NCBI GenBank assembly: GCA_051294905.1
Contig: CM119384.1
Span: 1,240,001 to 1,304,000, forward strand
Direction: 5' to 3'
DNA: 64,000 nucleotides
Origin: Botryllus schlosseri
Taxonomy: Eukaryota
Shown here one piece after another: positions 47,358 through 63,860 of this stretch (position 1 is its first letter; the number at the start of each line of letters is the position of its first letter). The translations under genes were made by a program, and so were the position numbers. The notes under the pieces were generated by a model that saw only the letters and a program-made list of their open reading frames with translations, did no database searches and had not been told where the DNA came from.

Positions 47358-50300
47358 TTATAAATCAACTGAATTGTCAAACCATTCACAGACATCATGT
47401 TGTAAGTCTATCGCGACGATGACTTTCCTAGCAGCCGCCTCCCACGAGGAGCCCAGCTCCAACCGGTCGTATATCATCGGACATTTCGCGTCCGCCAGTT
47501 TCCGTTCTTTTTTCAACCTTTCAACCAAGATTGCAAAGTGTTTATTTCCGAACCGAACAAAAGCCTCGTACAGCAATATCAGTGCGCTCTGACACAGCAT
47601 CTTCTTCGCTTGATTAAAACTTGTCGGGTCTAACGATTTACCGCCGGACGCGATCACAATCTTCTCGGCTGCCTTCTCTGCAAGATTCTCCATGTATTTT
47701 TCAGAACCGCCTGAAAGTTCAATGAGCTCTATCGCAATGCGAACGAGTAGCTCGTCAAAATCCTCTTTCGAGTTTACTTCCCGACGGGATAGTCCTGGTA
47801 CGTTTTCTGTATATCGCATCCGGGCTAAGCTTCGCACAGGAGCTGAACAGTCTTCATAGACATCATAACTAGATAGTATACAGTCTCCATAATCATCATC
47901 ATCATCATCACAGAAATGACGAAATATTGATTCGTCGATACCTGAAGTCTCTAAGGATGCTTGACATCCAAAGAACTCAGGTGGAGATGGAAGTTCCGGT
48001 GTCATGGGATCAGGCGATGCAGAGCTCGTGTCTTCAGATGATGCAGAGCTCGTGCCATCAGACGATGTGGCGCTTGTGTCATCATCTGAATTCGTTTCCT
48101 CAGCTAGATTCGCAGACAGCTTAAGGTTTGATTTTGATCGAGTTGCAGAAAGAAGACTATCTCGGTTTTTAGTACCCAGGTGAGACAAAGATACTGCTGC
48201 CTCTAAGAACATTTGTTCTTCTTCTGGAGAAAAATTGGAGTAACGTTGAGTACGATCATGGTGTCTAGATTTTACGGGTGGGCTGCTTGTGGGCGTGGGT
48301 AGATAAGAGTGCTGACAAGCGGGTGACTCTGATAGCCTTGAGCTGCCATGGAGTGGAGTTTGTGCAGAGTACCCGCGGGGCACAGGTGGCGTTGGATGTT
48401 CCGGTGGAATCGGACAAGAAAATTCATAACCCACGCCATCATCTGATTCCTCATCTTGATTCAAAGAAGCCCGCAAATGCGATCTATAAGCGACCGCTGC
48501 TACTGGTGATTCTCTTGCCGGTGCTGCTGTTGCTTGTGGTGCAGCTTTGCTTCCTGTAGGTTCAGCATTTACATCAGCATTTAGACGCAGACTCCTTGAG
48601 GGTGTGGAAAGTGAACCAGAAAATGGCTCTAGTATTTGCCCGTAACATTCGCGATCTTCTTCGAATACCTTCAGGACAATGGGTGGTGTTAGTTGTTCCT
48701 GTTCGAGTAAATCAAATAATGCAGAGCCCACGCCGTCATCTGATTCCTTATCCTGACTCGAAGAAGCCCGCAAATCAGATTTATAAGTGGCACTACTCAC
48801 AGGAGGAACAAGGTTTGTGCCTGCAGTTTCTGTTATTGCTATTGCCTGTGCTGCTGCCGCTCTTGCTCTTGATGCGTATTTTTTAAAATTTACTTCCACG
48901 TCTCTCTGTTGCATCGCAGCATATCGGGAAGTGCCGTATCCGCGGTCCTCTTTGTCCGGGATTGTTGCTGACTGTTGCTGCATACAAGCACTGTATTGAG
49001 CGCTTTGACGTGAAGAGCTGGACAGAGTTGAAGTCGAAGCAAAAGGTTGCGCTGGTTGCATTGAAGGCAAGTTTTCTGCAGTTTGTCCCCCGGCAGCTAG
49101 TTTATGAGACGGCTGCGCAAGCATAGGTGAATGATCCAATTGTAGTCTTGACATTTGAGCAGCAGTAAAGTGTCTTTTTTTCTTATGTAATGCTGTCGGA
49201 GATTGAAGTTCCCCCCCGCCAGTTACTGTTCCTCCCGCCGACAAGTAAGTCACGTTCGCCATCGATTTTTCCAAGCCAGAATTCAAATCAGAACCACCCG
49301 AGAATTTAAAGCCATGCCGCCCTTCCTTTGAAACAGGCGGACTCCCAGAGTCTATGGAAAGAAACCTGGGAGGCGCCATTGGTATACTTCGGCTGCCACT
49401 GTTTTTCATTTCCCAGGGTGGAGTTGGTTGTTCCTGTTCGATTGAATCAAATAATGCAGAACCCACGCCATCATCTGATTCCTTACCCTGATTCAAAGAA
49501 GCCCGCCAATCCGATTTATCAGGAGAAGGAACAAGGTTTGTGCCTGGAATATCAGATTTTCTCACCGGTGCTGCTGCTGCCACTCTTTCCAAATTGTCTG
49601 CCATTATCGGTGAGCTTAGTCGCTTATAATCACTGTGTTTAGCAGTTTGATGTGAAAAACCGAACAGAGTTGAAGGCGAAGCAAAAGGTTGCGTTGAAGG
49701 CAAGTTTTCTGCAGTTTGTCGGCCGGAAGCTGGTTTTTGAGACGGCTGATAAAGCCTAGGCGCACGTGCCAATAGCGGCCTTGGCATTTGAGGAACCGTC
49801 ATCCGTAATGGCGTTAGAGGGTGAAGTTCTCCCTCACCAGTTACTGTCCCTTTCGTAAATATCTGTTTCATGCTCGCCTTCGATTTTTCCAAGCCAAAAT
49901 TGCGGGGCTTAGGTGGCATCGGATGCTCCGGTGTAATTGGATGAGAAAATGAATATCCCATGTAATCGTCTGATTGCTTGTCCCGGATCGAAGAAGCCAG
50001 CCGATTCGATGCACTAGCAGCGCGATACGCATAAGGATTAATGCATGGAGTATCTGACAGATTTTCCAAAACAAGGCAATCCGTGGCTTTCAACGCGCTA
50101 GGTGCAGATGCCATCAATAATTTCTGTTTGAGCGAATCCATTCGTGCAGTTTCCACGCCATCATCAGATTCCTTGTCCTGATTCAAAGAAGACCCCAAAA
50201 CCGATTTATAGGGGGCACTATCCACAGAAGGAACAAGGTTTGTGCCTGGAATGACTGTTGCTGATTTTCTTATCGGTGCTGCCGCTGCCACTCTTTCCAT

Positions 50301-53300
50301 AGTCGCTGAACTTCGCCGCATATTATCACTGTGTTGAGTGCTTCGACGTGAAAAACCGTACAGAGTTGGAGGCGGAGAGAAAGATTGCGTTGAAGGCGAG
50401 TTTTCTGAAATTTGTTCACCGGCAGCTGGTTGTTGAGACGGCTGTTGCAGCCGGGGCGGATGTGCCGATGGTAGTCGATTTGACGTTCGAGCCTCATATT
50501 TTTTTTTCATCCTCCGTATTGGTGTTGGAGATTGAAGTTCTCCCCCGCCTGTTACTGTTCCTTTCGCCGACACGTGCTTCCCGCTCGCCATCGAGTTTTT
50601 TGAGTCAAAATTCCCATCAGAACCGCCGGAGAATTTCAAGCCACGCCCTTCCAATGATCCCAGTTGCCACGCTTGTGGAAGCGCAACATGATCGCGCAAC
50701 GGAACGGTATTTGAATTGGCAAATTCGACCGTATTGTGTGACATCTCTTTCGACATGTCTAATAAAGTGAATCGAGGTGGCTGAGGTAATTCCATGCTAT
50801 AAGATTGAATTCCGCTTTTCGCCATTGATTTTTCTGATTCATTTTCAACAGAAATAGCACATTTACGTCTGACGGCATTTGAAGATTTTCTTAACCTTCG
50901 ATTTACAATCCATTTTCGTTTCAACTCCGACTGCCACTCCTTCGCAGTCACCTCTTTGACAACATTTCGATATTCCTTTTCCATATCAATACCGCCAACG
51001 TAGTTCCAAAAGTCACCTTCCCCATAGAATGGTGTTCGAATTCTACACGAGATGAGAAAGGCCGCTACCACAGCGGGCCGGTACAATAAAGGAACGGACT
51101 GCAGACGCATCCTATTTTCAGCAGACCACGAATGCGACACAAGATCCTCAACCGCTTTTGAATAAGAGAGACTTTCACATTTGGACATTTCATGAAGAAC
51201 TTCATAATTCGGAGTACCGTCACGCAACAACGTTTTACTCAATATGGCGTCTGCGTTGGATCCTTCGATAGACACACCCAATCTCAAGCAAGATGCAGAT
51301 ACCAGCACCTTAGCCAGCGGATCCTTCTCGCACATTGAAAGAGCACTGTGCACCAATTCGCGAGCTCGAAGAATAGAGCTCGTCTCCATTTGCTCAACAC
51401 GCTTCAGGATATCTTTGATTTCATCTAGCGGCGATAGTTCCGAGTCAAGTTCCTGCCACGGCACTTCGGAGATTTCATCGACAAAGCAGGACTTCAGCAA
51501 TTCCTCAACAGTCGGTCCCGTGACGACGGACATGTCTTCTCCGGCTTCACGTTTTTCCACCGCGATAAAGCTGGTGAATTTGCAAACCACGGAATTTCTG
51601 ACGCTGAGCGAAATGATGTAAGACTTCCGCTCGTCTCGATATATTTCATCGACCAGGGAACTGTCGGCCAGATTCGCGGCTTCGTGTTCTTTGAAAATCG
51701 CTTTCGAAGCTAGATAATGAAGAGTTCTTCCTGTGACTTTGCTTTGAGAACTGACCGTAACTACTGTTGAGATTTCATTCCCCATAATGCGAGCGTGTAG
51801 AGTCGCTTTAGAGCAGTTTGGAGTGAAACTAAAAGCAGTCAATCGGGACCCACTGAAAACGCATTTGGGTTTTTCGGGTACGTTCACAAATGATTTACGA
51901 GTATCAGTTTCGTAGTTACACCAATCTATGTGCACATTCGTCAAAACCGGCTGTTGTGCGTAACGCAATTGATTCTTAATCTGACCCACCCACGTGTGTT
52001 TGACTGACGGTAAAAACTGCTCGTACTTGCCTCCTGTGAGATCACACATGCTCCGTAGAAAGTGCGCATTCGGCGATTCTCCAACAGCGAACGTAAAGAA
52101 TCTAGTCTGCGAAGAACTAACGTCTGAAATTTTCGACGCTAGTCGTAGTGTTCTTGTCTCCTCCGACAAGTGACCGTCGGAAATCAAAAACACGTTCTGC
52201 AGACTCGTTTGATATGACGAGTCACCGAGGAGTGACATAGCTGCAAGAATATGCACCAAATCCGAACCTCCGAGGTTTGGTTTGCAGGAGTTGATCATAT
52301 CTTTGGCCTTCAGCTTCATGTCATCGGAGGCGTTTTCAAACCTTACAAAGACTTCCTTAAAGTAAGACCCAAACACGACCACATTGAACTTTGTTGTGTC
52401 TGGAAGTAATTCTATTAAATTATTGGCGATATGCTTCGCGTGATTTCCGCTTTTACCGGCCATCGATGACGACATGTCAACCAGAATGGTACAGCAGTAA
52501 TCGTCACAAGCGTCAAAGTGAAATTCCGGGAAAAACGTCACCATAGCCACCTCGTTTGAATGCCCGTCCTCTATGTTATCTGTCCCTGTCTTATCTTCGA
52601 TGCGCTCGACCCAAATTCTGGGCACGTGAATTTCGGCGACTTTCACCAACAGTCGGAGTTTGTTCTTGAGCAAAGACGCAGAGCTTTTCAATTTCACGCA
52701 CGCTTTACTCAAAGTTTTCTTGTAACTTATGCCGTGCGTCGGCGAGCTAATGTCAAGTATATCGTACGGCATGTCGATTGACAGCATCAATGATGTTTTC
52801 TTTGCGTTCTGGGCTACTTTGAGAGAGTTCGTGATTGACTGAGTCGGGGATCCATCAATCAAAGTTGATTCTTGTTTTTGCTCTGATAAATTCTCAGGAA
52901 GTGTAAATAACACGCAGCTATCAGGATCGTTTACGGTTTCCAGCTCACAGACGTACTTGATCTTTATGATCACACGCGCTCTAGCAGGTATGTTGCCCAG
53001 ACTCAACGTAAAAACGTTAGGTTCTTCTTCGTCCATTAGATACGCACCGTGGCCTTGCGAAACCGCTTTTTTGTACTCTTTGCGAGCCTGCTGTTTCTCT
53101 TTCACTTCGCCGACAACATGTTTCTCGTTAATGAAAGCCTCGAATCCGCAAACGGCTGCGTTCTCTTCCAAAGGAAACACATATTTTCCTTCGATTTGCG
53201 AATTTAAATTGTTGTGGTACACTTGGAACACCGTAACCTCCGCGACAAGATCCAGGATTTTGCCGCGTACATGAAATTCTTCAAGATTCACTGCATTTTT

Positions 53301-55145
53301 CGTAGAGCTTACAAGTCCGTACGTCACGCTTTTGACAGACGGTTGAAACGATTCGGCAGATTCAATACTCGGTACATCTATCGTTGGCTTGAAGATCGGC
53401 AATTCCTTTAGCTGGTAATCAGTGCGCAGATTCTCCCCCGGCAATGTGAATTCAATGAGGTACTTCATTCTCTGTTGATTTTCCTTATAGATTGCAAATT
53501 CATTCCCAATCATTTCGCCATTCAAATTCTTTCCACAAACACAATCGAAACCCACTGGAGAAGATTGAAGCTCAGGCATACTTTTTTCAGTATTGTAAAC
53601 GCGCCCCAATGCAATTTCACTCACGAGCATCAGTCGCGTACCACGACTCTCACTCACGTTGGTGTATTTAGAAGATATCTGAAACGAGTCGGAGAAGTAT
53701 ATGCCGTGCCCTAGCTTCCCTTCATCTGTTCTGGGAATGCCTAATTCAGCAGACGCTTTCGATGGCATGACGAGACCTTTCGATAAAATACTGACGAAGT
53801 TGGACGTAGCTGACGAATGGAACAAGAGCCTTTTATTTTTCATTCCCGAGCGAAATTCGATGTCTTCCACCGTCCGACTGACTCGGTATATATTCACGAT
53901 TTCGTGTCTGCCTTCGTTTTGCGCCGGCAGCAAGTCTTTCACAAGCTTAAATTCATTTTCCGAAGGGCTAACATACCTGATCACGCAGTTCAGCGCAGAA
54001 TATTGCAGCATAAACGAGCGTAGGTCTACTGTATTCAAGAGATTTTCCTTGACACAAACTACATCTCTCAAAATCTGACAGATTTCACGTTCTTTCGCGA
54101 CTTTCCGAACAGAATCGATTACTTCCGTTGACTTTCTGCGGACGTACGTGTAGAATTCAGCAGAAAGCTTGCTACAATCTTTCCCTTCCTTGATTGCTTT
54201 CTCAATTTTCAGCAACGCCACCAGTCCGTTTCTCACATCGTGCGGAGTAATACTCTGAGAAATTACATCATACTCGGCAAGTGCTCCCAAGGAATCTTCC
54301 CAGAGAGTAGCGACCAAATGCTGTACTTTCTCATGTAAAGATCCTTTCGAAATTTTCATTTCTTCCAGTAAATTCTGCAATTTTTCTGTAGCCACGCCCT
54401 CAGCGGCAATCTCCATAATGTCCGTACATCTCCTTATATCGTTGCTTTCGATAGATTTTATCACAGATTCGTAACAGCGAGTTAAATCGTACAAATTCTT
54501 CACAAAATACATGGACCTGCGGACTTTGGTGTCACCGGTATGTTTTTGGCTGACCATAACGCGATACAACTCACCAGATTCGCTAGATACGTGAGCTTCA
54601 ACGCAGACAGCCCATTCATTTTTCTGGTTTGTTAGGAAAGAAAATTTAGCGACTTGAAACGTCTCAGGAAAATCAGGACATTCAGCACCGTCAAGCTTGT
54701 ATCTTTTCAACTTTTCCAAACTGAATTCCACCTTCTTTTTCTGTCTACTTTTATCGACCTTGTCACGAATAGAAATAGCTCCCCTTGAAAACTTATCTTT
54801 GATACCGCGCAGCACAGCTTCAGATTGCGGAGCAGGCAGTAGTTTACCGGCCGCGACACAGTCGCCCAGGAATTTCTCTGGAACCACAGAAACACCAATT
54901 TTCATAGCTTTTTGATGTCGGTATGTTTCTCTGTCAGAGTCACAAACGAAGAACGTCGTGTTTTTATTCAAAGTATAAGATATCTGACCGCCGTTTACCG
55001 TCACAAGCTGTCGTAGCGTCTTTTTGGCTTCCATTGTGTGTTGATGGAAATGGAACACGAATTGAACGCCGTTGAATATTCCTGGGTGTTTATCAATGGA
55101 AGGAGCAGGCATCACTGCTGGTTCACCTTGATAAAGCAGTGCCAC
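47358..55145 (-). CDS. PARP4: PARP4/vault PARP-like protein in one uninterrupted ORF (BRCT-PARP-VIT-vWA-repeat region-C-terminal MVP-binding-like region)
   Basis: 2595-codon ORF, first ATG at 55112. BRCT (GIFNGVQFVF...NGGQISYTLN); PARP catalytic LLFHSS (His at 53819), GIYFSDS, NEFAIY; VIT (EGKYVFPLEENAAVCGFEAFINEKHVVGEVKEKQQARKEY); vWA MIDAS DMSSSM and FLISDG; C-terminal RLELGSSW resembling the PARP4 C-terminus. Confidence 0.93.
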   Translation of the reverse strand: MALLYQGEPAVMPAPSIDKHPGIFNGVQFVFHFHQHTMEAKKTLRQLVTVNGGQISYTLNKNTTFFVCDSDRETYRHQKAMKIGVSVVPEKFLGDCVAAGKLLPAPQSEAVLRGIKDKFSRGAISIRDKVDKSRQKKKVEFSLEKLKRYKLDGAECPDFPETFQVAKFSFLTNQKNEWAVCVEAHVSSESGELYRVMVSQKHTGDTKVRRSMYFVKNLYDLTRCYESVIKSIESNDIRRCTDIMEIAAEGVATEKLQNLLEEMKISKGSLHEKVQHLVATLWEDSLGALAEYDVISQSITPHDVRNGLVALLKIEKAIKEGKDCSKLSAEFYTYVRRKSTEVIDSVRKVAKEREICQILRDVVCVKENLLNTVDLRSFMLQYSALNCVIRYVSPSENEFKLVKDLLPAQNEGRHEIVNIYRVSRTVEDIEFRSGMKNKRLLFHSSATSNFVSILSKGLVMPSKASAELGIPRTDEGKLGHGIYFSDSFQISSKYTNVSESRGTRLMLVSEIALGRVYNTEKSMPELQSSPVGFDCVCGKNLNGEMIGNEFAIYKENQQRMKYLIEFTLPGENLRTDYQLKELPIFKPTIDVPSIESAESFQPSVKSVTYGLVSSTKNAVNLEEFHVRGKILDLVAEVTVFQVYHNNLNSQIEGKYVFPLEENAAVCGFEAFINEKHVVGEVKEKQQARKEYKKAVSQGHGAYLMDEEEPNVFTLSLGNIPARARVIIKIKYVCELETVNDPDSCVLFTLPENLSEQKQESTLIDGSPTQSITNSLKVAQNAKKTSLMLSIDMPYDILDISSPTHGISYKKTLSKACVKLKSSASLLKNKLRLLVKVAEIHVPRIWVERIEDKTGTDNIEDGHSNEVAMVTFFPEFHFDACDDYCCTILVDMSSSMAGKSGNHAKHIANNLIELLPDTTKFNVVVFGSYFKEVFVRFENASDDMKLKAKDMINSCKPNLGGSDLVHILAAMSLLGDSSYQTSLQNVFLISDGHLSEETRTLRLASKISDVSSSQTRFFTFAVGESPNAHFLRSMCDLTGGKYEQFLPSVKHTWVGQIKNQLRYAQQPVLTNVHIDWCNYETDTRKSFVNVPEKPKCVFSGSRLTAFSFTPNCSKATLHARIMGNEISTVVTVSSQSKVTGRTLHYLASKAIFKEHEAANLADSSLVDEIYRDERKSYIISLSVRNSVVCKFTSFIAVEKREAGEDMSVVTGPTVEELLKSCFVDEISEVPWQELDSELSPLDEIKDILKRVEQMETSSILRARELVHSALSMCEKDPLAKVLVSASCLRLGVSIEGSNADAILSKTLLRDGTPNYEVLHEMSKCESLSYSKAVEDLVSHSWSAENRMRLQSVPLLYRPAVVAAFLISCRIRTPFYGEGDFWNYVGGIDMEKEYRNVVKEVTAKEWQSELKRKWIVNRRLRKSSNAVRRKCAISVENESEKSMAKSGIQSYSMELPQPPRFTLLDMSKEMSHNTVEFANSNTVPLRDHVALPQAWQLGSLEGRGLKFSGGSDGNFDSKNSMASGKHVSAKGTVTGGGELQSPTPIRRMKKKYEARTSNRLPSAHPPRLQQPSQQPAAGEQISENSPSTQSFSPPPTLYGFSRRSTQHSDNMRRSSATMERVAAAAPIRKSATVIPGTNLVPSVDSAPYKSVLGSSLNQDKESDDGVETARMDSLKQKLLMASAPSALKATDCLVLENLSDTPCINPYAYRAASASNRLASSIRDKQSDDYMGYSFSHPITPEHPMPPKPRNFGLEKSKASMKQIFTKGTVTGEGELHPLTPLRMTVPQMPRPLLARAPRLYQPSQKPASGRQTAENLPSTQPFASPSTLFGFSHQTAKHSDYKRLSSPIMADNLERVAAAAPVRKSDIPGTNLVPSPDKSDWRASLNQGKESDDGVGSALFDSIEQEQPTPPWEMKNSGSRSIPMAPPRFLSIDSGSPPVSKEGRHGFKFSGGSDLNSGLEKSMANVTYLSAGGTVTGGGELQSPTALHKKKRHFTAAQMSRLQLDHSPMLAQPSHKLAAGGQTAENLPSMQPAQPFASTSTLSSSSRQSAQYSACMQQQSATIPDKEDRGYGTSRYAAMQQRDVEVNFKKYASRARAAAAQAIAITETAGTNLVPPVSSATYKSDLRASSSQDKESDDGVGSALFDLLEQEQLTPPIVLKVFEEDRECYGQILEPFSGSLSTPSRSLRLNADVNAEPTGSKAAPQATAAPARESPVAAVAYRSHLRASLNQDEESDDGVGYEFSCPIPPEHPTPPVPRGYSAQTPLHGSSRLSESPACQHSYLPTPTSSPPVKSRHHDRTQRYSNFSPEEEQMFLEAAVSLSHLGTKNRDSLLSATRSKSNLKLSANLAEETNSDDDTSATSSDGTSSASSEDTSSASPDPMTPELPSPPEFFGCQASLETSGIDESIFRHFCDDDDDDYGDCILSSYDVYEDCSAPVRSLARMRYTENVPGLSRREVNSKEDFDELLVRIAIELIELSGGSEKYMENLAEKAAEKIVIASGGKSLDPTSFNQAKKMLCQSALILLYEAFVRFGNKHFAILVERLKKERKLADAKCPMIYDRLELGSSWEAAARKVIVAIDLQHDVCEWFDNSVDL

Positions 55146-55977
55146 AATAAGAGGTGGTTACAATCAGAGGCGCTGCTACTTAAGTTGTAGAAGTAGTGAC
55201 TTCCAAGATATGACAAAAACTTGGACTTGTCAGAACAAATACCAATTTGCGCTCAATTGCAACTGGTAGAAGCAGAGTTATTGCAGTTAAAAATTTTGGA
55301 TTAAAAAAATAGCATTGACAGTGGTTAATCAGATAATTATTAATGAAAAACTCATATAACTTTGCTTCTACGGGTTGGAATTCCGTTAAATTTGCTTTGC
55401 ATTGTTTTGTTGACAACTTATCAATTTTGTGGGGTAAACAGTGAAATTGGAAAAAAAAATTAAATTTTTATTATCATAAATTCAAAATTTTTAAAATCCT
55501 ATAGCTTCACATCTACTGCTTCGAATCGAGCAAAATTTGGTGTGCAGCGTTGATCAATTAGCCTCAAAAATTTGAAAAATAAGTTAATGCTCAGAGACAC
55601 ATGACACTACTGATTAGGATGAATCTTCGAAAATATATTACAGTGATACAGGAGAGATTTCGCAAGGTTCTTTCGGACAATTTCACTTATGCCAAGTGTT
55701 GAAAAGTTTTGTTAAAACAGCTGTCTACTTTTGAAAATTAAAATTGTAAAAATAACATAACCGATTGAGTATGTGGTGCAAGTCGCCAAAACCTACTCTG
55801 AAAAAGTCGATACTAATGATAACCAAACAAAGCCGTCTTGACTTGTACAAAACTAATCAGAAAATGCATTTCTACTTTGATATCGCAAAAATGAAATTAT
55901 ACTATTGATAATGTATGACTCAAATAACATATTTAGTCAGTGAATTGTATCCAAAGCTAAAAAGCTGTACCACCAAC

Positions 55978-58969
55978 CTGTAACAGGGCTGGATGTCTCT
56001 TTGAAAGCAAGAGCCTGATTCAGACCGTGGCACCACTGGTCCAAAATATTGTGTGATCTGTCAAAAGAATGTAAGCAAAAAATTTGTCATCTCAAAAATG
56101 ATGAAACAGAAGACAGGAGAGGATCCCCACCTTTCTTTGTCACTGCTTCGTACGTACATCACTATTTTTGAATCCGCAAATTTCAAGCTCAACCGAGTCC
56201 CATTTTTGAGTAGTCTCACACCCGCAATTGAAGTCAGAGGAATTTGCTGACAGGATAATGGGTCGCGCTTAAAATAGCGCAAAAAAGCAACAAAAATATG
56301 AATCACTGATACCTTGAAAATCAAAGATCCACCTTTAGACAAATACAGTGTGATGACGCCATCCTGAAATTTCCAAAAGTGACGTTTTTCCTGCAGAGTT
56401 AAATTAGGATTTAGTGAAAGTTCATACAAATACAAAAAACTTGTCAAATCGAGATATACGGCGGCATCTCTTTTTATAGCTTGTAAACCTGACATTACCT
56501 TGGAGTCAGTATTGGTGCTATGCATGAGCCAATTCTCCAAAGAAGGCTTGTCCAAGGCGTTTGGCTGTGAGAATAAATGAAATACATGTAATAAATTCAA
56601 CTATTCATAAAAGACAAAGCAAATAGGCTACCTTTTCTTGAAGTATTTACAATGAAACCAATATCAATGAGTATCTATTTAATTATGAAAGCACATTATT
56701 AAATACAATTGTGATAAAATATTACGTTTGATCAGTTAGACTTCATGACAAAAATTGATTACGGTCAGTTACACAAAATAGGAAACAGGATCAATGGCTT
56801 TGTGAAATACTTATGTAGTGCGAAAACATGTTTCAAATACAAGAACTCACTATAGGTATAAAAAATGTGGGTCTATTTAGCCAACAATTTTGATAGAATA
56901 CATCCACGGTATGGAGTAAAATCAGCAGTAAAGTATGCACAAGAATTAAAATGACAACAGTCTGCGTACTGATGGTAGGGAAAGGAGCCATTAGTTCAAC
57001 CATCAGTAACTAAGAGCCATAAATCAGGGTTGCAATGACTCGAGTCATGACTCGACTCGGCAAATTTTCGTTGTCTCGACTTGACTCGAGTTATTTTCTT
57101 AAAAGTGGATAATAACTTGACTCGAGTCAATTTGTGTATTGACTCGATTTGTACTCGAGTCATTACGCATGACTCGACCAAGTCATATGACTCGGCACAT
57201 TCTATATGACCTATTCAAGTCTCTTATATCAGGACCGATCATTGAAAAATTGGCCCAGAAACTATTTTTTCTATTTGTATAAACATGTTTAGTGCGAAAA
57301 ATGAATATATTTCGAATCCAAGGCCTTCGATATCACCCAAGAGTTTTCCAGAAGCGAGTTGAAACAGACTTGAACTGATAAGTACACTATGACTTGGACT
57401 CGGACTCGAGTCTTAACACAACGATTCGGACTCGTCCTGTTGCTTCCTGACTTGGACTTGACTCGGCAGTGAGCTGAAAATGACACGAATTGACTCGAGT
57501 CAAAACTATAAAAGTCAAATTGACTTGTGACTCGGACCTTGTGACTTGGTTATAACGAGGGCAAGTTTTTGCAACTTTTTTTACTGCTTCCGGCAGTTTC
57601 CTAAATACTCAGAAGTTATTTAGTTTTAAGCTGTTTGGAGGAATCATATAGTGCAACTTTTTGGAGCTTTGCTCCATTTTTTCAGACTAGTTTAATTCAA
57701 CTTTATCGCTATTTCATGCAACTTTTATCGATTTTTCATATAAATTTTTGCAAGATTTTTATTTTATTTTCCATGTATCTAACTTTTTACTGGAAATATT
57801 TGGCACTATATGTAAATAGATCGATTGATTATTTCACTGTCGTTTAAATTTGAGGTCCTTTATGATTTGACGTATATTCAGGCTAGACCGCCGAAAATTA
57901 TATTCTCATTTGGTCAATGTTTTCAGGCTATTGATTTTGTTGAAGTCGCCAACGCTGAGTTTTGCTACAGTGCCTTGGATACGGATCAATTAGAGTATCT
58001 CATACCCTCATAATTTCAAGGAACTTGTCCATAAATGCAACTTTGTAGTGTAACTTTTGCGAAAAAAAAATCGCAACTTTCGTCGGATTTGACTGCAACA
58101 AAAACTTGCCCTAGTTATAACATTGCTATAAATATTTAGATTTTGCAGCTTAATTTTGATACAAAGATACAATGCTGATCTAGTTATGCATTACACTTAT
58201 GAACAACAATAAATATAACATATCTAAATTCCCAACCTTTTCATTTTCGTTGGTAATTGCTTGAGGCAATATCCAGCCAGCAGGGGAAGTTGAGAATTGT
58301 TGTTTGAGTGGTTTCAGGTCAAGTTTTTGTTCCAATTTGCATCCATCCAATGCAAGCATACTAGAATGAGACTGGCTGTATAAGTTAACTTAAATTAACT
58401 TACTCGGTAGCACATTCATTAATTTCAGACATTGTCTGACATAGTGTCAATATTGATCTGTATTTGACATGATAAGCAACATGTTCACAACAATATCAAC
58501 AGGTTCACAACCACAGAGATGTTAATCATTTAAGAATTCATGACACGGATCAAAAAGTAATCAAAGAATGCGTACTCGTGGCAATGAGTTTTAAAACTTA
58601 CTGCAAGACTTTATTGTCCAATGGACCGGTACCTGATGATGCCTGTAACATAAAAAATGATATAGTTCTCTCATTCACAAAATTTCATGCTGGTGACGTC
58701 ATATTTTGTGATACGATTGTTGATATACAATGTTCTTTCCAATTCTCTACTAGTTGCTGACGATTACCCCTGACGAAAATCAGCCGAAAATATTTGTGTT
58801 CATTTCAATATGAATATACTATTTAATTGTATATTGAAGTTCTGTACCTCCAAGAAGCAGTTCAAACTGAATAAACAAGCATAAAATTCGTACTTACCAA
58901 CATGGACATTTCTTGAATTGCTGCTTTCAGCTGTAATATTTCAAGATCAGATAATGGTGGAATTGAAAT
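55978..58969 (-). CDS. Multi-exon coding segment ending in a PH domain (partial model)
   Basis: Phase-consistent GT-AG exons 58969-58898, 58642-58602, 58457-58404, 58360 (or 58375)-58237, 56564-56499, 56390-56313, 56267-56131, 56057-55978. PH-like part: PSLENWLMHSTNTDSK/EKRHFWKFQDGVITLYLSK.../QIPLTSIAGVRLL...SLKFADSKIVMYVR.../LDQWCHGLNQAL. Confidence 0.65.
57557..58113. mobile_element. hAT-like MITE family C copy
   Basis: TIRs gagggcaagttt...aaacttgcccta; TSD gttataac. Confidence 0.85.
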
Positions 58970-60655
58970 CTATCGCATCTGGGGTGTAGCTGAATATTTT
59001 TCTGATAACAAGCTTTAAAGGTTTAGGTTGGATAAAAATGTGAAATTGTATTAGGCAGACGGTACAACAGACTGCATTATGTCAATAGCAGACTACGTAA
59101 ACACAGGGAGTATTATTGCCTTTAATGTTGACATTTCAAAGCCCCAACAAGCCATACAGGTTGACGAGAAAAAGCAGTGAATTTTGAGGAATAGGCCTAT
59201 CTAACGAATTAAATTCATACCAAGTGTGGCAATGTAACAAAAGCAAACAATCTAAAAAATACTCTTACAGGTACAGAACCTCCATCATATCGCATAAAAC
59301 AGCATGTCCCTAGATTTATTAGAACATGCATTTCACACTCGGTGAAAAATTTGCCCTTGACTAATCCCCTGAAGCTCGATTCAGATCAGGCAAAGGCCAG
59401 TAATTCTGCCATTAGCAAACATTTGTTGGACAATTCTGTTTGTGCCAGAGATTATAGAGACAGTTGTCGCTGGGAGAGGCCATTCACACTTTCATTTGTC
59501 TGCCTTGGAGTCGACTTTTATCAAAATACTACCTAGTTTGTGCCAACAAAAATAGTACATTGAGCCTATCTCTTCGCCTCGATTATTCTAAATTTCATGC
59601 CGGTGATGTCATATTTGGTGATACGATTGTTGATACACAATGTTCTTATATTTGCATATGGCAGAATTCCAGGCCGTTGCCTGTTCTATTTCCACTTTTA
59701 GGAGCGAGTCAAAAAAAACGACCTTCTCTCCAACTGATGCGCAAGTTTTAACAAATCTAGGAATATTCTGTTTTAGGCGGTCCTGATCTAAAAAGCACTG
59801 TTCAAACTCCTGTTCTATGATCCAAATTTCTATCGAAAAACCTTGCTGGTTCACCACACAAGCACATCATTTCAGACTTGCCGTGTTATCATAGAGTTGC
59901 ACCACACACCACTGACATAACAGGATGTCTAGTCACCATGTACATAAACTGTTATGCATATTCGTTAATGATCTGCTATGAGTATCATGTAGTTGAAAAT
60001 CGGTTATAATTGCATCGACGGGATACACCACATACAATTGCCACTATTATGATTTTGAATATCTATAGAATCAGTAAAAGAGAAATAGACACCGATGGTC
60101 CAGAAAAAAATGGCAATAAAACAGATTGAATTTACAATATAAAGGACACCAAGCACGAAGAATCATGCATCTTGAATTAGCGAATGAAAGTACAGGAAAA
60201 GCAAAACAACAATTTCTACTGAATCAATACTAGTCAGCCCTCAAGTTCACTGGACCACGACCAGACAAATCGATCTCGTCTTCCGGCACATACCACCTCA
60301 TGTCGCCTGTCCTTTTATATTATTTTCTTTCACTTTTCATTTAGTGTGCATGCCTCCTTTTTACATCGCCCAAGTCAGGTGGGTGTCTGAAATCGAAGAC
60401 ATCTCCAAGTCGTTTCGACACCTTCTTATCTTTCATTGTATGTAATTGTTAACAATAAGTTGAATTGAATTTTGAATGTATACTCTAAGGTCTCAATATA
60501 ATTTGATATAATATACGCCCGTATTTATCGAATAACATCTGCTTCTCTGTGAACGCTAACTTGACCATTTTACAAAACCCTACACAAATAAATGCACATG
60601 CTGCTGAATTGCTGTTCGTAGAATTACCTAGCAAAGCAAACATAAATATCCTCAC

Positions 60656-63183
60656 CTTGAATCGATCATTCACGTTCCTGTGATTGTGTGCCGTGACGAA
60701 AAATCGGGACTTTCCTTTCGCGGTATCTTCATTCTCATTTAGGACACCAGTGTCACAAACGTGTTTGGAAGTGACAAGTTTTTTGTTGAGAAATGAAACG
60801 ATATACTGATCATCCACCAATGCTGAGAGAACCTTAATTCAAATGAGAAACTAAACTGAAATATTCTGTAAAGGAACAAACTTCCTAACAGCTATAACCA
60901 GCTGTAACTAACTCAATACACAATGGGTATATCAAATCGATGACTTGAATCCGATTTGATTACTAGTTGACTGGTACAAGTTGAGTACTGCTAGCAGATT
61001 CCATCATCTTCAACGAGTGCCGATATCTCGCCCATGGCATCAAAATTTCATTCTCAAACAAGGGGATTATTGTGCTTTGAGCTATCACATGATTGTCGGT
61101 GTCAAGACACGACAGCGGGAACGAATGTTAAAGATATTCAATGTTCATAGCAGCACAAAATGGCTTTCATCATATATAGCTCGGTATGTTGGCATCAATT
61201 TCTAGTTGTCCAGTAAATGGATAATAAATGCATATTGACAAGAGTCATTGGTGTATGCATATATTTTGTCACATAAAATTCTTCAAAGAAGAATACCTAA
61301 TTCTGGCAACAGTCTATTCTATAGACATTGTGTCATCATATCTTTGATTAGTCGTATAAAAGAACCACAATATCGAGAAGAAACAATAACAATGACGACA
61401 TAAGCACCTAGGATATTTAGATTATGATTCATATAAACATAAGCCCTACAAAAGTATTGCATTACAAAGCATCAAAGTGTAGGCCTACCTATCTCTTGAC
61501 CTAATTGGTATAAGTATTAGTGCACAATAGGGCTGTTCAAAGTTTTTTTTTTCAATTTTACTGGCTATTATATAAATTAGTTACCTAAAAGAAACGGTGC
61601 ACACCAACTTTGGTGCAATCCCAACAAGTGGACGCGAATATATTGATGTTCAAAATTTAAGATTTCAAATCATACTACCGATATTTACGGTGGATAGATC
61701 TAGAATAAATAATGAAAAAATTTGCCATCGTAAATACTATTTTTTCCAAATCCGAAATTTTGCACTCTAATAACTTTGCTGCTTGAGTCAAATTTGTTGT
61801 GCATCGTTCTTTTTCAGACGACCTAACAATTTCATGGGGTAGCCAGTAAAATTCGAAAAAGATCCACATTTATTTTCATCAAATAAATCCAAAATTTTCT
61901 ACTACAAAAAAATTCGCTGCCACGTGCTCAAAGATTGAGTTCCTCCTCATAGACTAGTAGTTAAGGTCATACCAAACGAGATATACACCCTACCTGACCC
62001 TTGCTGTTAACACTGATGATACCATCCACGGCCGCGCATGGGGCTGTGGCAAATATTATGTCTGTACTCATTCTGTTTTTGAACATGCAGTCCAGTGTCT
62101 CCAGATGGTAGAGATGAAAAAATCCGTGTTTGCTTAAGACAAGCAAAACTTTGTGAACTTTTGACTCCTGAAAATTCAACAATCATTCAATAGAAGTTTT
62201 AAATAGCAACATGAAAACTCCCCGAATTCAAGTAATTCTATTTGTTCTATTAGGCGCGAAGATGTGGAGAAGTTCATTCTATAAATAAATTACCCATTTG
62301 TGACGAGGAATTTGCACGCCATATGGCCATTGGGTCATTGAAATTGGTGATTTCAAAACGTCAAAATTTATATACCAGTAATTGAGACCTGGACATCGGG
62401 GACAAAAAATATAAATCCCAATTACTATTCCTAAATTAAAATTAAATTGGCCTCTTTTGCGAAAAAATAAAGGTGTGTGTACCAGTCATAAAACTATTTT
62501 ACTATCACGGTAGCAGATTGAATAGAAAATACACAAGATATGCTTACATAGTGATAAAAATAGTGAAAATATCAAGACATATTGCCATATATATTCTACT
62601 CAAAGCTTTTCAAATGACTCTAATCCAGAACGAATGTCACTAAATGCGGTGAATCCACACGGTAAGAACTTAACATACTGGAAAACATATAACAACACAC
62701 AATCAGTACATGTAACAGAGACAAATTTGGCTATAAAAATAACCGAATAGCATCACAACACTGATGAAAAACATTCCAAAAAACAGCAAATTTAAAATGC
62801 CAACCTGCATATCAATAGGAGTGTCGTTTGGTATTGAAAAAGTCACTACGACAGACCTTTTCCGGAAAGGTTGATCCATAGACACTGCGTGGCTGACTTG
62901 TGCCACACTGAGTACGTTGCCCTTTTGTGTGCTCGAAGCAGAGCATAGCAAAATGGAAGAATCCTACACATAACTAAATGTCAGATAACATATTCTTATT
63001 AACTAAGTTCATTTATTTACCTTATTTCCATCGAGCACTATCTCAGCAAATGTGGCAACATGCCCTTCCAGTATCTTGGTAGTGCCGGACTGGACAGAAT
63101 ACCTTTGTATGGTTCCACTGGTCGCTCGTTCACCCTTCGTCAATGTTCCAATGATGAGAGAGTGTTTCTGCTGTGAATCGGTC
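60656..63183 (-). CDS. Divergent clathrin heavy chain terminal-domain/linker paralogue (partial; 5-prime exons probably outside the window)
   Basis: Exons 63183-63021, 62963-62805, 62167-61994 and 60832-60656, all GT-AG and in phase: TDSQQKHSLIIG...IQRYSV...LEGHVATFAE / QPFRKRSVVV...NDTPIDMQ / SKHGFFHLYHLETLDCMFKNRMSTDIIFATAP...GIISVNSKGQ / VLSALVDDQYIVSFL. Colinear with clathrin heavy chain propeller and linker as I recall that sequence. Confidence 0.8.
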
Positions 63184-63379: not shown

Positions 63380-63860
63380 CACCAAAACTAACTCTAACCC
63401 CGACCCGAATCTTGAAACGAACCCGCATAGATATCCTAACCCTAATCTAACCCAAATCAAAACCAAACCTAGCTCAACCCTAACCCCTGAAATTAAACCT
63501 ATATATCCTAACCTATCCTATCCTGATGGTTACCATATGTCCTCCTTTATGAGGATTTGTCCTCCTTTGGAGAATTTGCCCTCCTTTTTAGCATAAAAGA
63601 CCCAAAACGACAACGAATAACGCGAAATGTGGGCCGAATTGCGTAGAGACGGGTATTTCGGGACTTTTTGATTCAGTCAACCCAATAAAATTAGCCGTAC
63701 AAATTTAAAAATCAGCCGTTTTCTCGTCCGCTATAGTAACTTTTGCAGCCTGGCAAAAGTGTTCTTTCCGAATCTCAAAATATGGTAACTGTACCTAATC
63801 TCAAGGCTAACCCCGAACTAACCCAAATCGCAACCTATCCCTTACCCAACCCTAACCCAA
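63380..63860. repeat. Degenerate (ctaacc)-rich repeats flanking a decayed MITE
   Basis: cctaaccctaa-like units at 63380-63515 and 63790-63860. Confidence 0.6.

What the first reader, a model, noticed from the sequence alone, without database searches (positions are those of the whole stretch)
47358..63183. Candidate chimeric gene: clathrin terminal domain / PH domain spliced onto vault PARP4
Seen: three coding blocks on the minus strand, closely packed. The last PH exon ends ACA G|GTTGGT (phase 1, 55978). About 850 nt downstream, a pyrimidine-preceded AG (cttattgtggcactgctttatcaag|GTGAA, exon start 55126) opens in phase 1 into the PARP4 ORF, 14 nt before its first ATG. Splicing gives ...SSPVTGEPAVMPAP...BRCT with no stop, and the intervening DNA looks intronic and MITE-filled. 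Established: PARP4 normally begins with its BRCT domain, and I know of no PH- or clathrin-fused PARP4. Inference: a membrane- or endocytosis-targeted vault PARP created by exon capture. Alternatives: (a) the PH gene ends at AG|AGTAG (55797, stop 55795-55793) and the 55126 AG is a 5-prime-UTR or SL trans-splice acceptor in an operon; (b) separate genes. I could not link the clathrin exons to the PH exons across 60655-58970.
Basis: partly seen in the sequence, partly recalled or inferred. Interest (0 to 1): 0.8.

Follow-up and report, generated by a model that had tools for sequence, protein, structure and literature searches.

The report
Expressed clathrin-propeller–PH–PARP4 fusion gene
In this sea-squirt-like genome the vault enzyme PARP4 is made from one spliced mRNA that puts a "legless" copy of clathrin's adaptor-binding propeller and a PH domain in front of it; mussels carry a similar clathrin-propeller–PARP4 fusion, which hints at what this poorly understood enzyme is aimed at.

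Summary
One contig spans from inside PARP4 to 60790.

My model has 16 GT-AG exons and one open frame of 3151 aa. The start codon lies 3.4 kb beyond the window. The domain order is clathrin terminal-domain (TD) paralogue, linker, PKD-type PH, BRCT, PARP (H-Y-E kept), VIT, vWA, long tail, conserved C-terminus.

The TD copy shares six intron positions with the canonical clathrin gene on another contig, so it arose by partial DNA duplication. Styela clava has the same layout of PH exons plus one giant PARP4 exon but no TD exons. Ciona PARP4 has at least 25 exons and no extension.

Mytilus PARP4-like proteins carry a TD in their C-terminal tail. Other invertebrate PARP4 tails hold fragments of actin, ubiquitin, synaptobrevin, HSP70, Snf7 and 14-3-3.

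Function is inferred only: the TD probably tethers the enzyme to proteins with clathrin-box motifs. The scan's only other notes are first-reader notes on this same window, not on other DNA.

The parts
47358..55126 (-). Exon 16: single 7769-nt exon encoding aa 563-3151 (the whole PARP4 part) plus the stop at 47358-47360. The former start ATG is at 55112-55110.
   Evidence: ORF; Pfam; acceptor AG at 55128-55127 used in contigs of 3 runs; model
54831..55088 (-). BRCT domain (aa 576-661)
   Evidence: Pfam BRCT_2 3.6e-9 and BRCT 3.4e-6; coordinates
53448..53957 (-). PARP catalytic domain (aa 953-1122) with the H-Y-E triad kept. PARP_reg lies just upstream at 54045-54251.
   Evidence: Pfam PARP 1.1e-24; alignment with mouse, Styela, Ciona, Nematostella and Mytilus
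52953..53285 (-). VIT domain (aa 1177-1287)
   Evidence: Pfam VIT 5.4e-38
52020..52487 (-). vWA domain (aa 1443-1598)
   Evidence: Pfam VWA_3 2.6e-19
48405..50171 (-). Part of the long tail, which has no Pfam match. It holds five ribosomal-P-stalk-like acidic motifs (ESDDGVG..LFD type) at aa 2215, 2280, 2445, 2690 and 2789.
   Evidence: Regex on the model; weak match to the P-stalk-like piece of a Mytilus PARP4-like tail; Pfam finds nothing in the tail
47409..47675 (-). Conserved C-terminal ~90 aa (aa 3047-3135). It aligns to the extreme C-termini of PARP4 proteins from tunicates, a coral, a sponge and vertebrates, so it is the likely vault-docking end.
   Evidence: blastp E 3e-10 to 6e-4; Pfam PARP4_MVP-ID not detected
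55127..55977 (-). Intron 15 (851 nt, GT..AG). It contains a ~310-nt dispersed repeat at 55239-55551.
   Evidence: Junction in 3 runs; repeat copies genome-wide
55978..56057 (-). Exon 15: PH C-terminal helix (..DQWCHGLNQAL..) and linker. It ends in phase 1.
   Evidence: Junctions on both sides in 3 runs
56131..56246 (-). Exon 14: PH strands
   Evidence: Junctions; homology to Styela PH
56313..56390 (-). Exon 13: PH core (KRHFWKF..SLIFK). Its exon end matches the one in Styela.
   Evidence: Junctions; tblastn with Styela N-termini E 9e-5 and 2e-5; blastp to Styela P0001 E 8e-10
56499..56564 (-). Exon 12: start of the PH region
   Evidence: Junctions
58237..58360 (-). Exon 11: linker
   Evidence: Junctions
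58602..58642 (-). Exon 10: 41-nt micro-exon (linker)
   Evidence: Junctions 58360|58602 and 58642|58898 in 3 runs
58898..58930 (-). Exon 9: 33-nt micro-exon (linker)
   Evidence: Junctions 58642|58898 and 58930|60656 in 3 runs
60656..60832 (-). Exon 8: end of the clathrin terminal-domain paralogue (VLSALVDDQY..) and start of the linker
   Evidence: Contigs in 3 runs; the loose end at 60834 continues into exon 7
61994..62167 (-). Exon 7: TD blades 6-7 (..HLYHLETLDC..GIISVNSKGQ)
   Evidence: X16 loose-end consensus matches its 3' end; 55% identical to the canonical clathrin exon with the same boundaries
62805..62963 (-). Exon 6: TD blade 5-6 region
   Evidence: Homology and GT-AG sites; no RNA junction was examined here
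63021..63183 (-). Exons 4 to 1 lie beyond the window at 64407-64476, 65332-65487, 66441-66648 and 67354-67395 (window coordinates extended; these equal G000:C14:1240000 + x). The ATG is at 67395.
   Evidence: Flank fetched; exon model; an in-frame stop lies 6 codons upstream of the ATG

Best explanation
SHOWN:
- This is one real, transcribed gene of 16 exons. About 20 kb of it runs from 47358 to 67395 in extended window coordinates.
- Its mRNA joins a clathrin-heavy-chain terminal-domain (TD) paralogue, a short linker and a PH domain in frame to a complete PARP4.
- The predicted protein has 3151 aa. The domain order is TD (aa 1 to about 332), linker, PH (about 455-556), BRCT, regulatory and catalytic PARP domains with an intact H-Y-E triad, VIT, vWA, a tail of about 1450 aa, and a conserved C-terminal end.

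INFERRED HISTORY:
1. An intron-poor PARP4 (one giant exon) acquired upstream PH exons before this lineage and Styela split. The old 5' leader became coding.
2. Later, or with loss in Styela, a partial DNA duplication of the first eight exons of the clathrin heavy-chain gene was placed upstream. All checked intron positions were kept.

INFERRED MECHANISM:
- The TD copy has no legs and no trimerisation region, so it cannot build coats.
- It keeps the clathrin-box residues (Q89, F91), the W-box residues (Q152, I154) and most Royle-box residues. It has lost the arrestin-box residues.
- It therefore most likely acts as a monomeric reader of short clathrin-binding motifs. It would tether the ADP-ribosyltransferase to proteins that carry such motifs, and through the conserved C-terminus perhaps tether vault particles too.
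- Those proteins could be the cell's own endocytic adaptors (a targeting role) or foreign proteins that mimic them (a bait role).
- The PKD-type PH domain would add a second membrane or protein contact.

MY ODDS:
- A real fusion mRNA with an intact frame: about 0.9.
- The TD binds such motifs: about 0.5.
- Given that it binds, targeting versus bait: roughly even.
For: RNA evidence:
- Spliced junctions with GT..AG ends appear in contigs of three runs from three studies, including 55978->55126. One contig spans PARP4 to 60790. Introns have near-zero depth while exons have 97 (X16) and 12 (X1), so these runs are RNA.
- At the PARP4 5' end of X16 the only depth is that of the fusion contig, so no competing 5' end is seen.

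Gene model:
- The open frame has 0 stops over 16 canonical exons.
- The genome has only one PARP4 locus, so the contigs do not come from a retrocopy.
- PARP4 domains, the catalytic triad and the conserved C-terminus are all present.

TD paralogue:
- It is 43-51% identical to canonical clathrin TDs.
- Its exon boundaries are identical at six positions to the canonical gene at G000:C2:13.10-13.11 Mb.
- In the tree it is sister to that canonical copy, with support 83/77.
- Site residues were read from the alignment against Table 2 of PMC5182127.

PH domain:
- The Styela orthologue matches the PKD3 and PKD2 PH domains by sequence (E 2e-8 and 4e-7) and by fold ranking.
- Our PH region matches Styela's with E 8e-10 and shares an exon end with it.

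Conservation:
- Both tandem Styela genes consist of PH exons plus one giant PARP4 exon.

Recurrence:
- Mytilus californianus and M. trossulus PARP4-likes carry a full TD in their tails. It matches our TD with E 4e-61.
Against: - Contigs are assemblies, not single molecules. No one record shows exon 1 and exon 16 together.
- Exons 1-6 rest on homology and splice sites only.
- The one raw-read RNA run gave no reads on the exons, because only 6% of it was read. So there is no information on strand, transcript ends or a spliced leader.
- In X16 the clathrin-side junctions have depth 160-166 against 97 for the PH-PARP4 contig. Some transcripts may therefore carry the TD exons without PARP4.
- The retained ATG 14 nt inside exon 16 could serve a TD-less isoform.
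- No protein-level evidence exists.
- Pfam does not recognise the PH region, and the fold model is weak (pLDDT 57).
- Arrestin-box residues are lost and the TD is on a long branch (1.76), so motif binding may have changed or decayed.
- Styela lacks TD exons within 20 kb upstream.
Confidence: 0.75

Rival explanations
1. Two genes with occasional read-through (a conjoined transcript). On this view a TD-PH gene and a separate PARP4 gene are the main products, and the fused mRNA is a minor by-product.
For: The clathrin-side junctions in X16 are deeper (160-166) than the PH-PARP4 contig (97). An ATG sits 14 nt inside exon 16. A related tunicate contig (L023) has an unfused PARP4 with stop codons directly before its ATG.
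Against: No contig gives PARP4 its own 5' end, and none gives the PH exons their own 3' end. The only depth over 54850-55049 in X16 is the fusion contig. The candidate terminal acceptor at 55797 is read through unspliced at depth 3. Both Styela paralogues have the same PH-plus-giant-exon layout with no Met near the start of the giant exon, so the fusion is old and obligate there.
Confidence: 0.1
2. An operon-like arrangement. The AG at 55126 is mainly a spliced-leader trans-splice acceptor, so most PARP4 protein starts at the ATG at 55112. Cis-splicing to the PH exon would then be an alternative outcome.
For: Tunicates use SL trans-splicing (my own knowledge). A short 14-nt leader before the ATG is typical of such genes. 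A 16-nt leader would be invisible in 31-mer contigs, and the raw-read run had no cover.
Against: Cis-spliced junctions are what is seen, in three studies. The contig does not break at 55126 in X16 or X1. In Styela the homologous exon has no start codon at its beginning.
Confidence: 0.1
3. Assembly artefact, or a decaying non-functional upstream part. On this view the joins are de Bruijn-graph chimeras, or the TD exons are a pseudogene carried along in a 5' UTR.
For: The TD branch is very long (1.76 changes per site) and three arrestin-box residues are lost.
Against: Eight joins fall exactly on GT..AG with only 0-4 nt of overlap, in three independent studies. There are 565 upstream codons with no stop, and the start codon aligns with clathrin's own start. 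Clathrin-box and W-box residues are kept.
Confidence: 0.03

Closest known systems
PARP4 / vault PARP (vPARP; PARP clade 5) of vertebrates
   Same: Same order of BRCT, regulatory and catalytic PARP (H-Y-E), VIT, vWA, long disordered tail and conserved C-terminal end. About 33% identity over the first 1100 aa. A major vault protein gene is present in this genome.
   Different: About 560 extra N-terminal residues (clathrin TD paralogue + PH). A much longer tail with P-stalk-like motifs. The Pfam MVP-interaction model is not detected. The PARP4 part is encoded by one exon.
Styela clava PARP4-like genes (XP_077968685.1 and XP_039269914.1; XP_039269916.2), two tandem copies
   Same: 45-48% identity. 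Both have small upstream exons encoding a PH domain, joined to one giant PARP4 exon that begins about 10 residues before the BRCT domain. A PH exon boundary is shared.
   Different: No clathrin-like exons in the locus, including 10 kb upstream of the gene model. The gene is duplicated in tandem there and single here.
Mytilus PARP4-like proteins with a clathrin terminal domain (M. californianus LOC127712542, M. trossulus LOC134727324)
   Same: A full but divergent clathrin TD (42-45% identical to canonical clathrin, 32% to ours) sits in the same polypeptide as PARP-VIT-vWA. Both TDs have lost Q192 of the arrestin box and share a 2-residue deletion.
   Different: The TD sits near the C-terminus of the tail, after a ubiquitin domain and a Prp8 fragment, and there is no PH domain. 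These are gene models spanning about 170 kb that I could not check on DNA. The tree places them inside mollusc clathrins (88/84), but a single origin with ours is not rejected (AU p = 0.19).
Canonical clathrin heavy chain (here at G000:C2:13.10-13.11 Mb)
   Same: Seven-blade terminal domain with a start codon at the same position. Six shared intron positions. Clathrin-box and W-box residues are kept.
   Different: No ankle, leg (CHCR) or trimerisation regions. Only 51% identity, on a long branch. Arrestin-box residues are changed.
PARP4-like proteins with appended 14-3-3, actin or ubiquitin-related domains (Perina et al. 2014, PMC4245714)
   Same: The general habit of clade-5 PARPs of carrying extra modules taken from abundant cell proteins.
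   Different: Those modules are C-terminal. Clathrin TD and PH were not among them, and neither was an N-terminal addition.
Chimeric genes made by capture of an intronless copy (TRIM5-CypA type), and integrated-decoy fusions of plant NLR receptors
   Same: An intron-poor coding block is joined to upstream exons through a new splice. A copy of a host protein that pathogens bind is built into a larger protein (analogy only).
   Different: No parental intron-containing PARP4 remains. No poly(A) tract or target-site duplication was examined. No immune role has been shown for this protein.

Membership tests
PARP4 / vault PARP (clade 5) | BRCT domain N-terminal to the catalytic domain | tested here: met
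   Pfam BRCT_2 3.6e-9 and BRCT 3.4e-6 at ORF aa 20-105
PARP4 / vault PARP (clade 5) | PARP catalytic domain with the H-Y-E triad | tested here: met
   Pfam PARP 1.1e-24. H (LLFH), Y (GIYF) and E (NEFAIY) align with mouse, Ciona, Nematostella and Mytilus.
PARP4 / vault PARP (clade 5) | VIT followed by vWA after the catalytic domain | tested here: met
   VIT 5.4e-38 and VWA_3 2.6e-19
PARP4 / vault PARP (clade 5) | C-terminal MVP-interaction region and physical presence in vaults | tested here: inconclusive
   Pfam PARP4_MVP-ID is not found at E <= 1. The last ~90 aa do align to the extreme C-termini of PARP4s, vertebrates included (E 3e-10 to 6e-4). MVP is present in the genome. Binding cannot be tested here.
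PARP4 / vault PARP (clade 5) | Closest relatives are PARP4 proteins, and this is the only such locus in the genome | tested here: met
   684 hits at E <= 1e-10; nearly all of the 120 listed that carry a source name are named PARP4 or PARP4-like, with Styela clava best. The own-genome search finds one locus.
Clathrin heavy chain | N-terminal seven-blade terminal domain | tested here: met
   aa 1-332 align end to end with canonical TDs (43% to P0159, 51% to the same genome's copy). Clathrin_propel scores 22.7 bits on exon 2.
Clathrin heavy chain | Leg (CHCR, PF00637) repeats and trimerisation region | tested here: not met
   After aa ~345 the frame continues into linker, PH and PARP4. There is no PF00637 hit in the PARP4 exon. 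So this is a TD-only paralogue and not a clathrin heavy chain.
Clathrin heavy chain | Peptide-binding sites of the TD (clathrin box Q89/F91; W box Q152/I154; arrestin box W164/L183/Q192; Royle box F9/E11/Q14/Q16/N17; Table 2 of PMC5182127) | tested here: inconclusive
   Alignment. Q89, F91, Q152, I154, F9, E11 and Q14 are kept. The changes are Q16K, N17D, W164H, L183R and Q192K. Binding itself was not tested.
PH domain (protein kinase D type) | Sequence match to PH domains | tested here: inconclusive
   Pfam finds nothing for our read-through frame or the Styela N-termini. phmmer against PDB gave nothing for our read-through frame. The Styela orthologue hits the PKD3 and PKD2 PH domains (2d9z, 2coa) at E 2e-8 and 4e-7. 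Language-model neighbours are all PH clusters (0.92). Our region is homologous to Styela's (E 8e-10; alignment).
PH domain (protein kinase D type) | Seven-strand sandwich capped by a C-terminal helix with a conserved Trp | tested here: inconclusive
   The AlphaFold model of the Styela region shows 7 strands and a long C-terminal helix, but mean pLDDT is 57. The top Foldseek hits are the PKD2 and PKD3 PH domains (E 2e-3 and 4e-3) and most of the next 48 are PH domains too. The Trp is present in ours (DQWCHGL) and in Styela.
PH domain (protein kinase D type) | Phosphoinositide binding | not tested
   No assay or motif analysis was done.
Retrocopy-driven chimeric gene (TRIM5-CypA type) | Intronless copy of a gene that is multi-exon in relatives, joined to host exons by a new splice | tested here: met
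   One 7769-nt exon here. aa 165-2150 lie on one exon in Styela. There are at least 25 exons in Ciona. The junction is seen in RNA.
Retrocopy-driven chimeric gene (TRIM5-CypA type) | Parental intron-containing copy still present; poly(A) remnant or target-site duplication | tested here: not met
   Only one PARP4 locus exists in the genome. MVP is also in one 893-aa open frame, so general intron loss is an equally good explanation. Retroposition hallmarks were not searched for.
Integrated decoy / bait fusion (as in plant NLR-ID) | The fused module copies a host protein that pathogen factors bind, and the carrier acts in defence | not testable with these tools
   Viral peptides bind the same TD sites as cellular ones (PMC5182127). 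The mammalian PARP4 tail is under positive selection (PMC4038475). Tails of other PARP4-likes carry actin, ubiquitin, synaptobrevin, HSP70, Snf7, EF-hand and 14-3-3 pieces. No functional data exist.

The most novel reading that the evidence does not exclude
PARP4-family proteins may be modular 'bait carriers'. On this reading, an ADP-ribosyltransferase that docks in vaults repeatedly takes up copies or fragments of conserved host proteins that pathogen factors bind or modify. The TD here and in mussels would be such baits, and so would these pieces elsewhere:
- the actin D-loop piece in sponge, oyster, hemichordate and Clavelina;
- ubiquitin;
- the synaptobrevin SNARE motif;
- the HSP70 substrate-binding domain;
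- Snf7;
- calmodulin-like EF-hands;
- 14-3-3;
- ribosomal P-stalk tails.

Proteins that seize these baits would be ADP-ribosylated or trapped. This would be an animal counterpart of the plant integrated-decoy receptors. It would also give the vault/PARP4 system a function.
Probability: 0.2. Interest if true: 0.9.

Novelty: new variant of a known kind. Interest (0 to 1): 0.7.

Why it matters
The roles of PARP4 and the vault particle are still unknown after four decades. A fusion partner acts as a natural label for what a protein works on.

Here the enzyme is hard-wired to the one part of clathrin that reads adaptor motifs. A similar wiring appears in mussels at the other end of the protein. This points to clathrin-box-bearing proteins, whether endocytic adaptors or their viral mimics, as clients of PARP4, and that can be tested directly with pull-downs and ADP-ribosylation assays.

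The case also fits a wider pattern. Invertebrate PARP4 tails are strings of fragments of conserved host proteins. They lie in the same region that evolves under positive selection in mammals (PMC4038475). That pattern supports a defence-related reading of the whole family.

The locus is also a clean example of gene birth by three routes at once: partial duplication of an essential gene, exon capture, and recruitment of a 5' leader as coding sequence.

Tried and rejected
1. Raw-read RNA run X23. Only about 6% of it was read and no read lay on the exons. It therefore gives nothing on strand, transcript ends or a spliced leader.
2. The search of protein representatives with TD exon 2. It returned only short clathrin fragments (best 62% identity) and no long fused relatives. 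It was uninformative for dating the fusion.
3. The search for homologous proteins with the first 700 aa of the PARP4 exon, meant to fish out this organism's own Logan-derived proteins. Nothing scored. No stored protein holds our own PH region, so the spliced N-terminus could not be sent to Pfam, PDB or folding tools. I used the Styela orthologue and local scripts instead.
4. Pfam on the PH region (our read-through frame, the Styela N-termini) and on TD exons 6 and 7. No useful hits. phmmer of the read-through frame against PDB also gave none.
5. Pfam on the tail in three pieces at E <= 1. Nothing.
6. DNA of the Mytilus gene. The gene range (170 kb) was too long to fetch, so those models remain unchecked.
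7. AU test for independent origin of the tunicate and mussel PARP4-TDs. It was inconclusive (p = 0.19).
8. Search of our protein and Styela's for the actin, ubiquitin, synaptobrevin, 14-3-3, HSP70, Snf7 and EF-hand pieces seen in other PARP4 tails. None were found; only weak P-stalk-like matches appeared.
9. Own clathrin-box or W-box motifs in the tail, as a possible self-binding mechanism. None were found there.
10. No support.
11. Literature searches for PARP4 with decoy or bait ideas, or with clathrin. No paper makes this link.

Full report
WHAT IS THERE

The minus strand of 47358-55145 is one open frame of 2595 codons. It carries the full PARP4 set of domains: BRCT, PARP regulatory, PARP catalytic, VIT and vWA. 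Upstream on the same strand lie short exon-like blocks. The acceptor opens into the PARP4 frame 14 nt before its first ATG.

RNA EVIDENCE

- Two run searches found public runs of the same organism that hold the PARP4 exon nearly completely but only a fifth to a third of the 54900-56700 stretch. That is the pattern expected of RNA.
- I laid four runs on 54850-60849. In three of them (X16, X1, X6, from three studies) contigs skip exactly 55127-55977 with GT..AG ends.
- Seven more GT..AG junctions appear in the same runs: 56057|56131, 56246|56313, 56390|56499, 56564|58237, 58360|58602, 58642|58898 and 58930|60656.
- One X1 contig of 1807 nt runs from 857 nt inside the PARP4 exon through all of these to 60790.
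- An X16 contig on 60656-60834 continues, beyond the acceptor, with letters that are the 3' end of the next clathrin-like exon (..GIISVNSKGQ, ending at 61994).
- Intron depth is zero or near zero while exon depth is 97 (X16) and 12 (X1).
- The genome has a single PARP4 locus, so these contigs come from spliced RNA of this locus and not from a processed DNA copy.
- The depth seen inside the 851-nt intron (X6: 25-33; a depth-7 contig in X16) falls on a ~310-nt dispersed repeat at 55239-55551 that has thousands of candidate copies.
A depth-3 contig reads straight through it.
- The raw-read run gave no reads on the exons.

GENE MODEL

I fetched the flank beyond the window and used a clathrin sequence from the searches as a guide. 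The upstream exons could then be placed.

The complete model has 16 exons, all GT-AG, a CDS of 9456 nt and a protein of 3151 aa.

- The ATG is at extended coordinate 67395 (G000:C14:1307395), 3.4 kb outside the window.
- It aligns with clathrin's own start (MKEKYPIKFKEHLQ against M..LPIRFQEHLQ).
- An in-frame stop lies six codons upstream of it.
- Exons 8-16 and the 7/8 junction are seen in RNA. Exons 1-6 are inferred.

THE THREE PARTS

1. Clathrin terminal domain (aa 1 to about 332).
   - It aligns end to end with clathrin terminal domains. It is 43% identical to a canonical guide and 51% to the canonical clathrin heavy chain of the same genome.
   - The canonical gene lies on another contig (G000:C2:13.10-13.11 Mb).
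   - Six exon boundaries coincide between the two genes. The copy was therefore made by DNA duplication of the 5' part of the clathrin gene and not by retroposition.
   - After the propeller there are no leg repeats. The frame passes through about 120 linker residues into the PH region.
   - I read the sites against the mutational table of Muenzner et al. (PMC5182127). The copy keeps the clathrin-box pair Q89/F91, the W-box pair Q152/I154, and F9/E11/Q14 of the Royle box. All three arrestin-box residues have changed (W164H, L183R, Q192K).

2. PH domain (aa about 455-556).
   - This region is not recognised by Pfam.
   - It is homologous to the N-terminal extension of Styela clava PARP4-like proteins (E 8e-10; alignment; shared exon end).
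   - That Styela region matches the solved PH domains of protein kinase D3 and D2 by sequence (E 2e-8 and 4e-7).
   - Its language-model neighbours are PH clusters.
   - A low-confidence model (pLDDT 57) has seven strands and a C-terminal helix. The PKD2 and PKD3 PH domains are its first two Foldseek hits, and most of the next 48 are PH domains.
   - I therefore accept 'PH domain, PKD type' with moderate confidence.

3. PARP4 proper.
   - The H-Y-E triad is intact.
   - There is a tail of about 1450 residues without Pfam matches. It holds five P-stalk-like acidic motifs.
   - The last ~90 residues align with the extreme C-termini of PARP4 proteins from tunicates, coral, sponge and vertebrates. 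In vertebrates this is the end that docks PARP4 in the vault (my own knowledge).
   - A major vault protein gene exists in the genome.

COMPARATIVE PICTURE

- The best PARP4 matches are two Styela clava proteins (48% and 46% identity). The organism is therefore a tunicate close to the stolidobranch ascidians.
- In Styela the two genes are tandem. Each consists of small PH exons followed by one giant PARP4 exon that starts about ten residues before the BRCT domain, as here.
- No clathrin-like exon is found in that locus, including 10 kb upstream.
- Ciona PARP4 starts at the BRCT domain and has at least 25 exons. Clavelina also starts at BRCT.
- A Logan contig of another tunicate holds an uninterrupted, unfused PARP4 with stops directly before its ATG.
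- The simplest order of events is: intron loss or retroposition of PARP4, then capture of PH exons before the Styela split, then addition of the clathrin TD copy in this lineage (or its loss in Styela).

A SECOND CLATHRIN-PARP4 FUSION

- Our TD matches residues 2175-2509 of a Mytilus californianus PARP4-like protein (E 4e-61, 32% identity).
- M. trossulus has the same architecture: PARP, VIT, vWA, ubiquitin, a Prp8 fragment, then TD. M. galloprovincialis has a partial model.
- In a maximum-likelihood tree our TD is sister to this genome's canonical clathrin (83/77), and the mussel TDs sit among mollusc clathrins (88/84). Both are on long branches.
- An AU test does not reject a single origin (p = 0.19).
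- The two share a two-residue deletion and the D187Q/R188S change.
- Independent gain is therefore favoured, by tree position, opposite ends of the protein and absence in intermediate taxa, but it is not proven.

WIDER PATTERN

Invertebrate PARP4-like tails carry fragments of conserved host proteins:
- an actin piece that keeps the ..VGRPRH.GVMVGMGQKD.YVG.. segment, in a sponge, an oyster, a hemichordate and Clavelina;
- whole ubiquitin;
- the synaptobrevin SNARE segment;
- the HSP70 substrate-binding domain;
- Snf7;
- EF-hand pairs;
- a 14-3-3 fragment;
- a ribosomal P-stalk tail.

Perina et al. (PMC4245714) had noted 14-3-3, actin and ubiquitin-related additions. Daugherty et al. (PMC4038475) found the disordered tail of mammalian PARP4 under positive selection and proposed it as a host-pathogen interface. 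I found no paper that links PARP4 to clathrin or to a bait idea.

HOW IT MOST LIKELY WORKS

Shown: one mRNA and one frame. Inferred: everything that follows.

- A TD without legs cannot polymerise. What it can still do is bind short clathrin-box and W-box motifs.
- Fused to PARP4, it would bring the transferase to proteins that display such motifs, and possibly bring vaults too through the conserved C-terminus.
- If those proteins are the cell's adaptors, this is a targeting device for endocytic or TGN membranes, and the PH domain would help.
- If they are viral or bacterial mimics of adaptors (viral peptides bind the same TD sites, PMC5182127), it is a bait.
- The recurrence in mussels and the catalogue of other host fragments make me weigh the two about equally.

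RIVALS

The rivals are a conjoined read-through product, mainly SL trans-splicing at 55126, and artefact or decay. They are listed with their tests in the rival explanations. None is favoured by the data, but the first two cannot be excluded as additional isoforms. Two points keep them open: the clathrin-side junctions in X16 are deeper (160-166 against 97), and there were no raw reads on the exons.

VERDICT

- Function is not established.
- It is a new variant of a known kind: clade-5 PARPs with appended modules. The PH fusion is already implicit in Styela gene models.
- The clathrin-TD fusion and its recurrence are undescribed in the literature I could search.

Noticed in passing
Proteins P0118, P0015, P0010, P0102, P0028, P0006: C-terminal tails of invertebrate PARP4-like proteins are strings of fragments of conserved host proteins. 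The pieces seen are the actin N-terminal/D-loop piece, ubiquitin, the synaptobrevin SNARE segment, the HSP70 substrate-binding domain, Snf7, EF-hand pairs, a 14-3-3 fragment, the P-stalk tail and a Prp8 fragment. The actin piece is nearly identical to real actin from sponge to tunicate.
   Followed up: partly
window 48405-50171 (-): Five motifs of the type ESDDGVG..LFD, which resemble the conserved C-terminal tail of ribosomal P-stalk proteins, lie in the PARP4 tail. This is also the subject of the scan note s1-274214. Pfam does not call them.
   Followed up: partly
window 58650-58860 (intron 9): A ~200-nt element has enormous depth in all RNA runs: 41,000 in X16 against 97 for the exons, and about 90 raw reads per strand class in X23. 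The reads run on into unlike sequence. It looks like a highly transcribed dispersed repeat and not part of this gene. There is no Rfam match at gathering score.
   Followed up: no
window 55239-55551; 63529-63790; 56850-58250: MITE-like dispersed repeats fill the introns. The first has more than 2700 candidate copies and the second more than 1100. The stretch 56850-58250 also shows repeat-level depth in the RNA runs.
   Followed up: partly
G000:C14:4808172-4843921 and G000:C118:30867-34307 (L012-L016): A cluster of at least four uninterrupted open frames of 560-640 aa has a distant PARP catalytic domain (26-36% identity to the PARP4 catalytic region). A fifth lies on an unplaced contig. This may be a lineage-specific expansion of small PARPs.
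   Followed up: no
G000:C9:23386588-23386947: The major vault protein shoulder domain lies in an 893-aa open frame, so MVP also seems to be intronless in this genome. This weakens the case that the PARP4 exon must be a retrocopy.
   Followed up: no
L017 (Ciona intestinalis) 33102-35263: Downstream of Ciona PARP4, a separate 161-aa gene model carries a faint PARP4_MVP-ID hit. It may be a split or mis-modelled C-terminal end of Ciona PARP4.
   Followed up: no
L010, extended window 77100-77741 (-): A 214-aa open frame lies about 10 kb upstream of the fusion gene's start. It was not examined.
   Followed up: no
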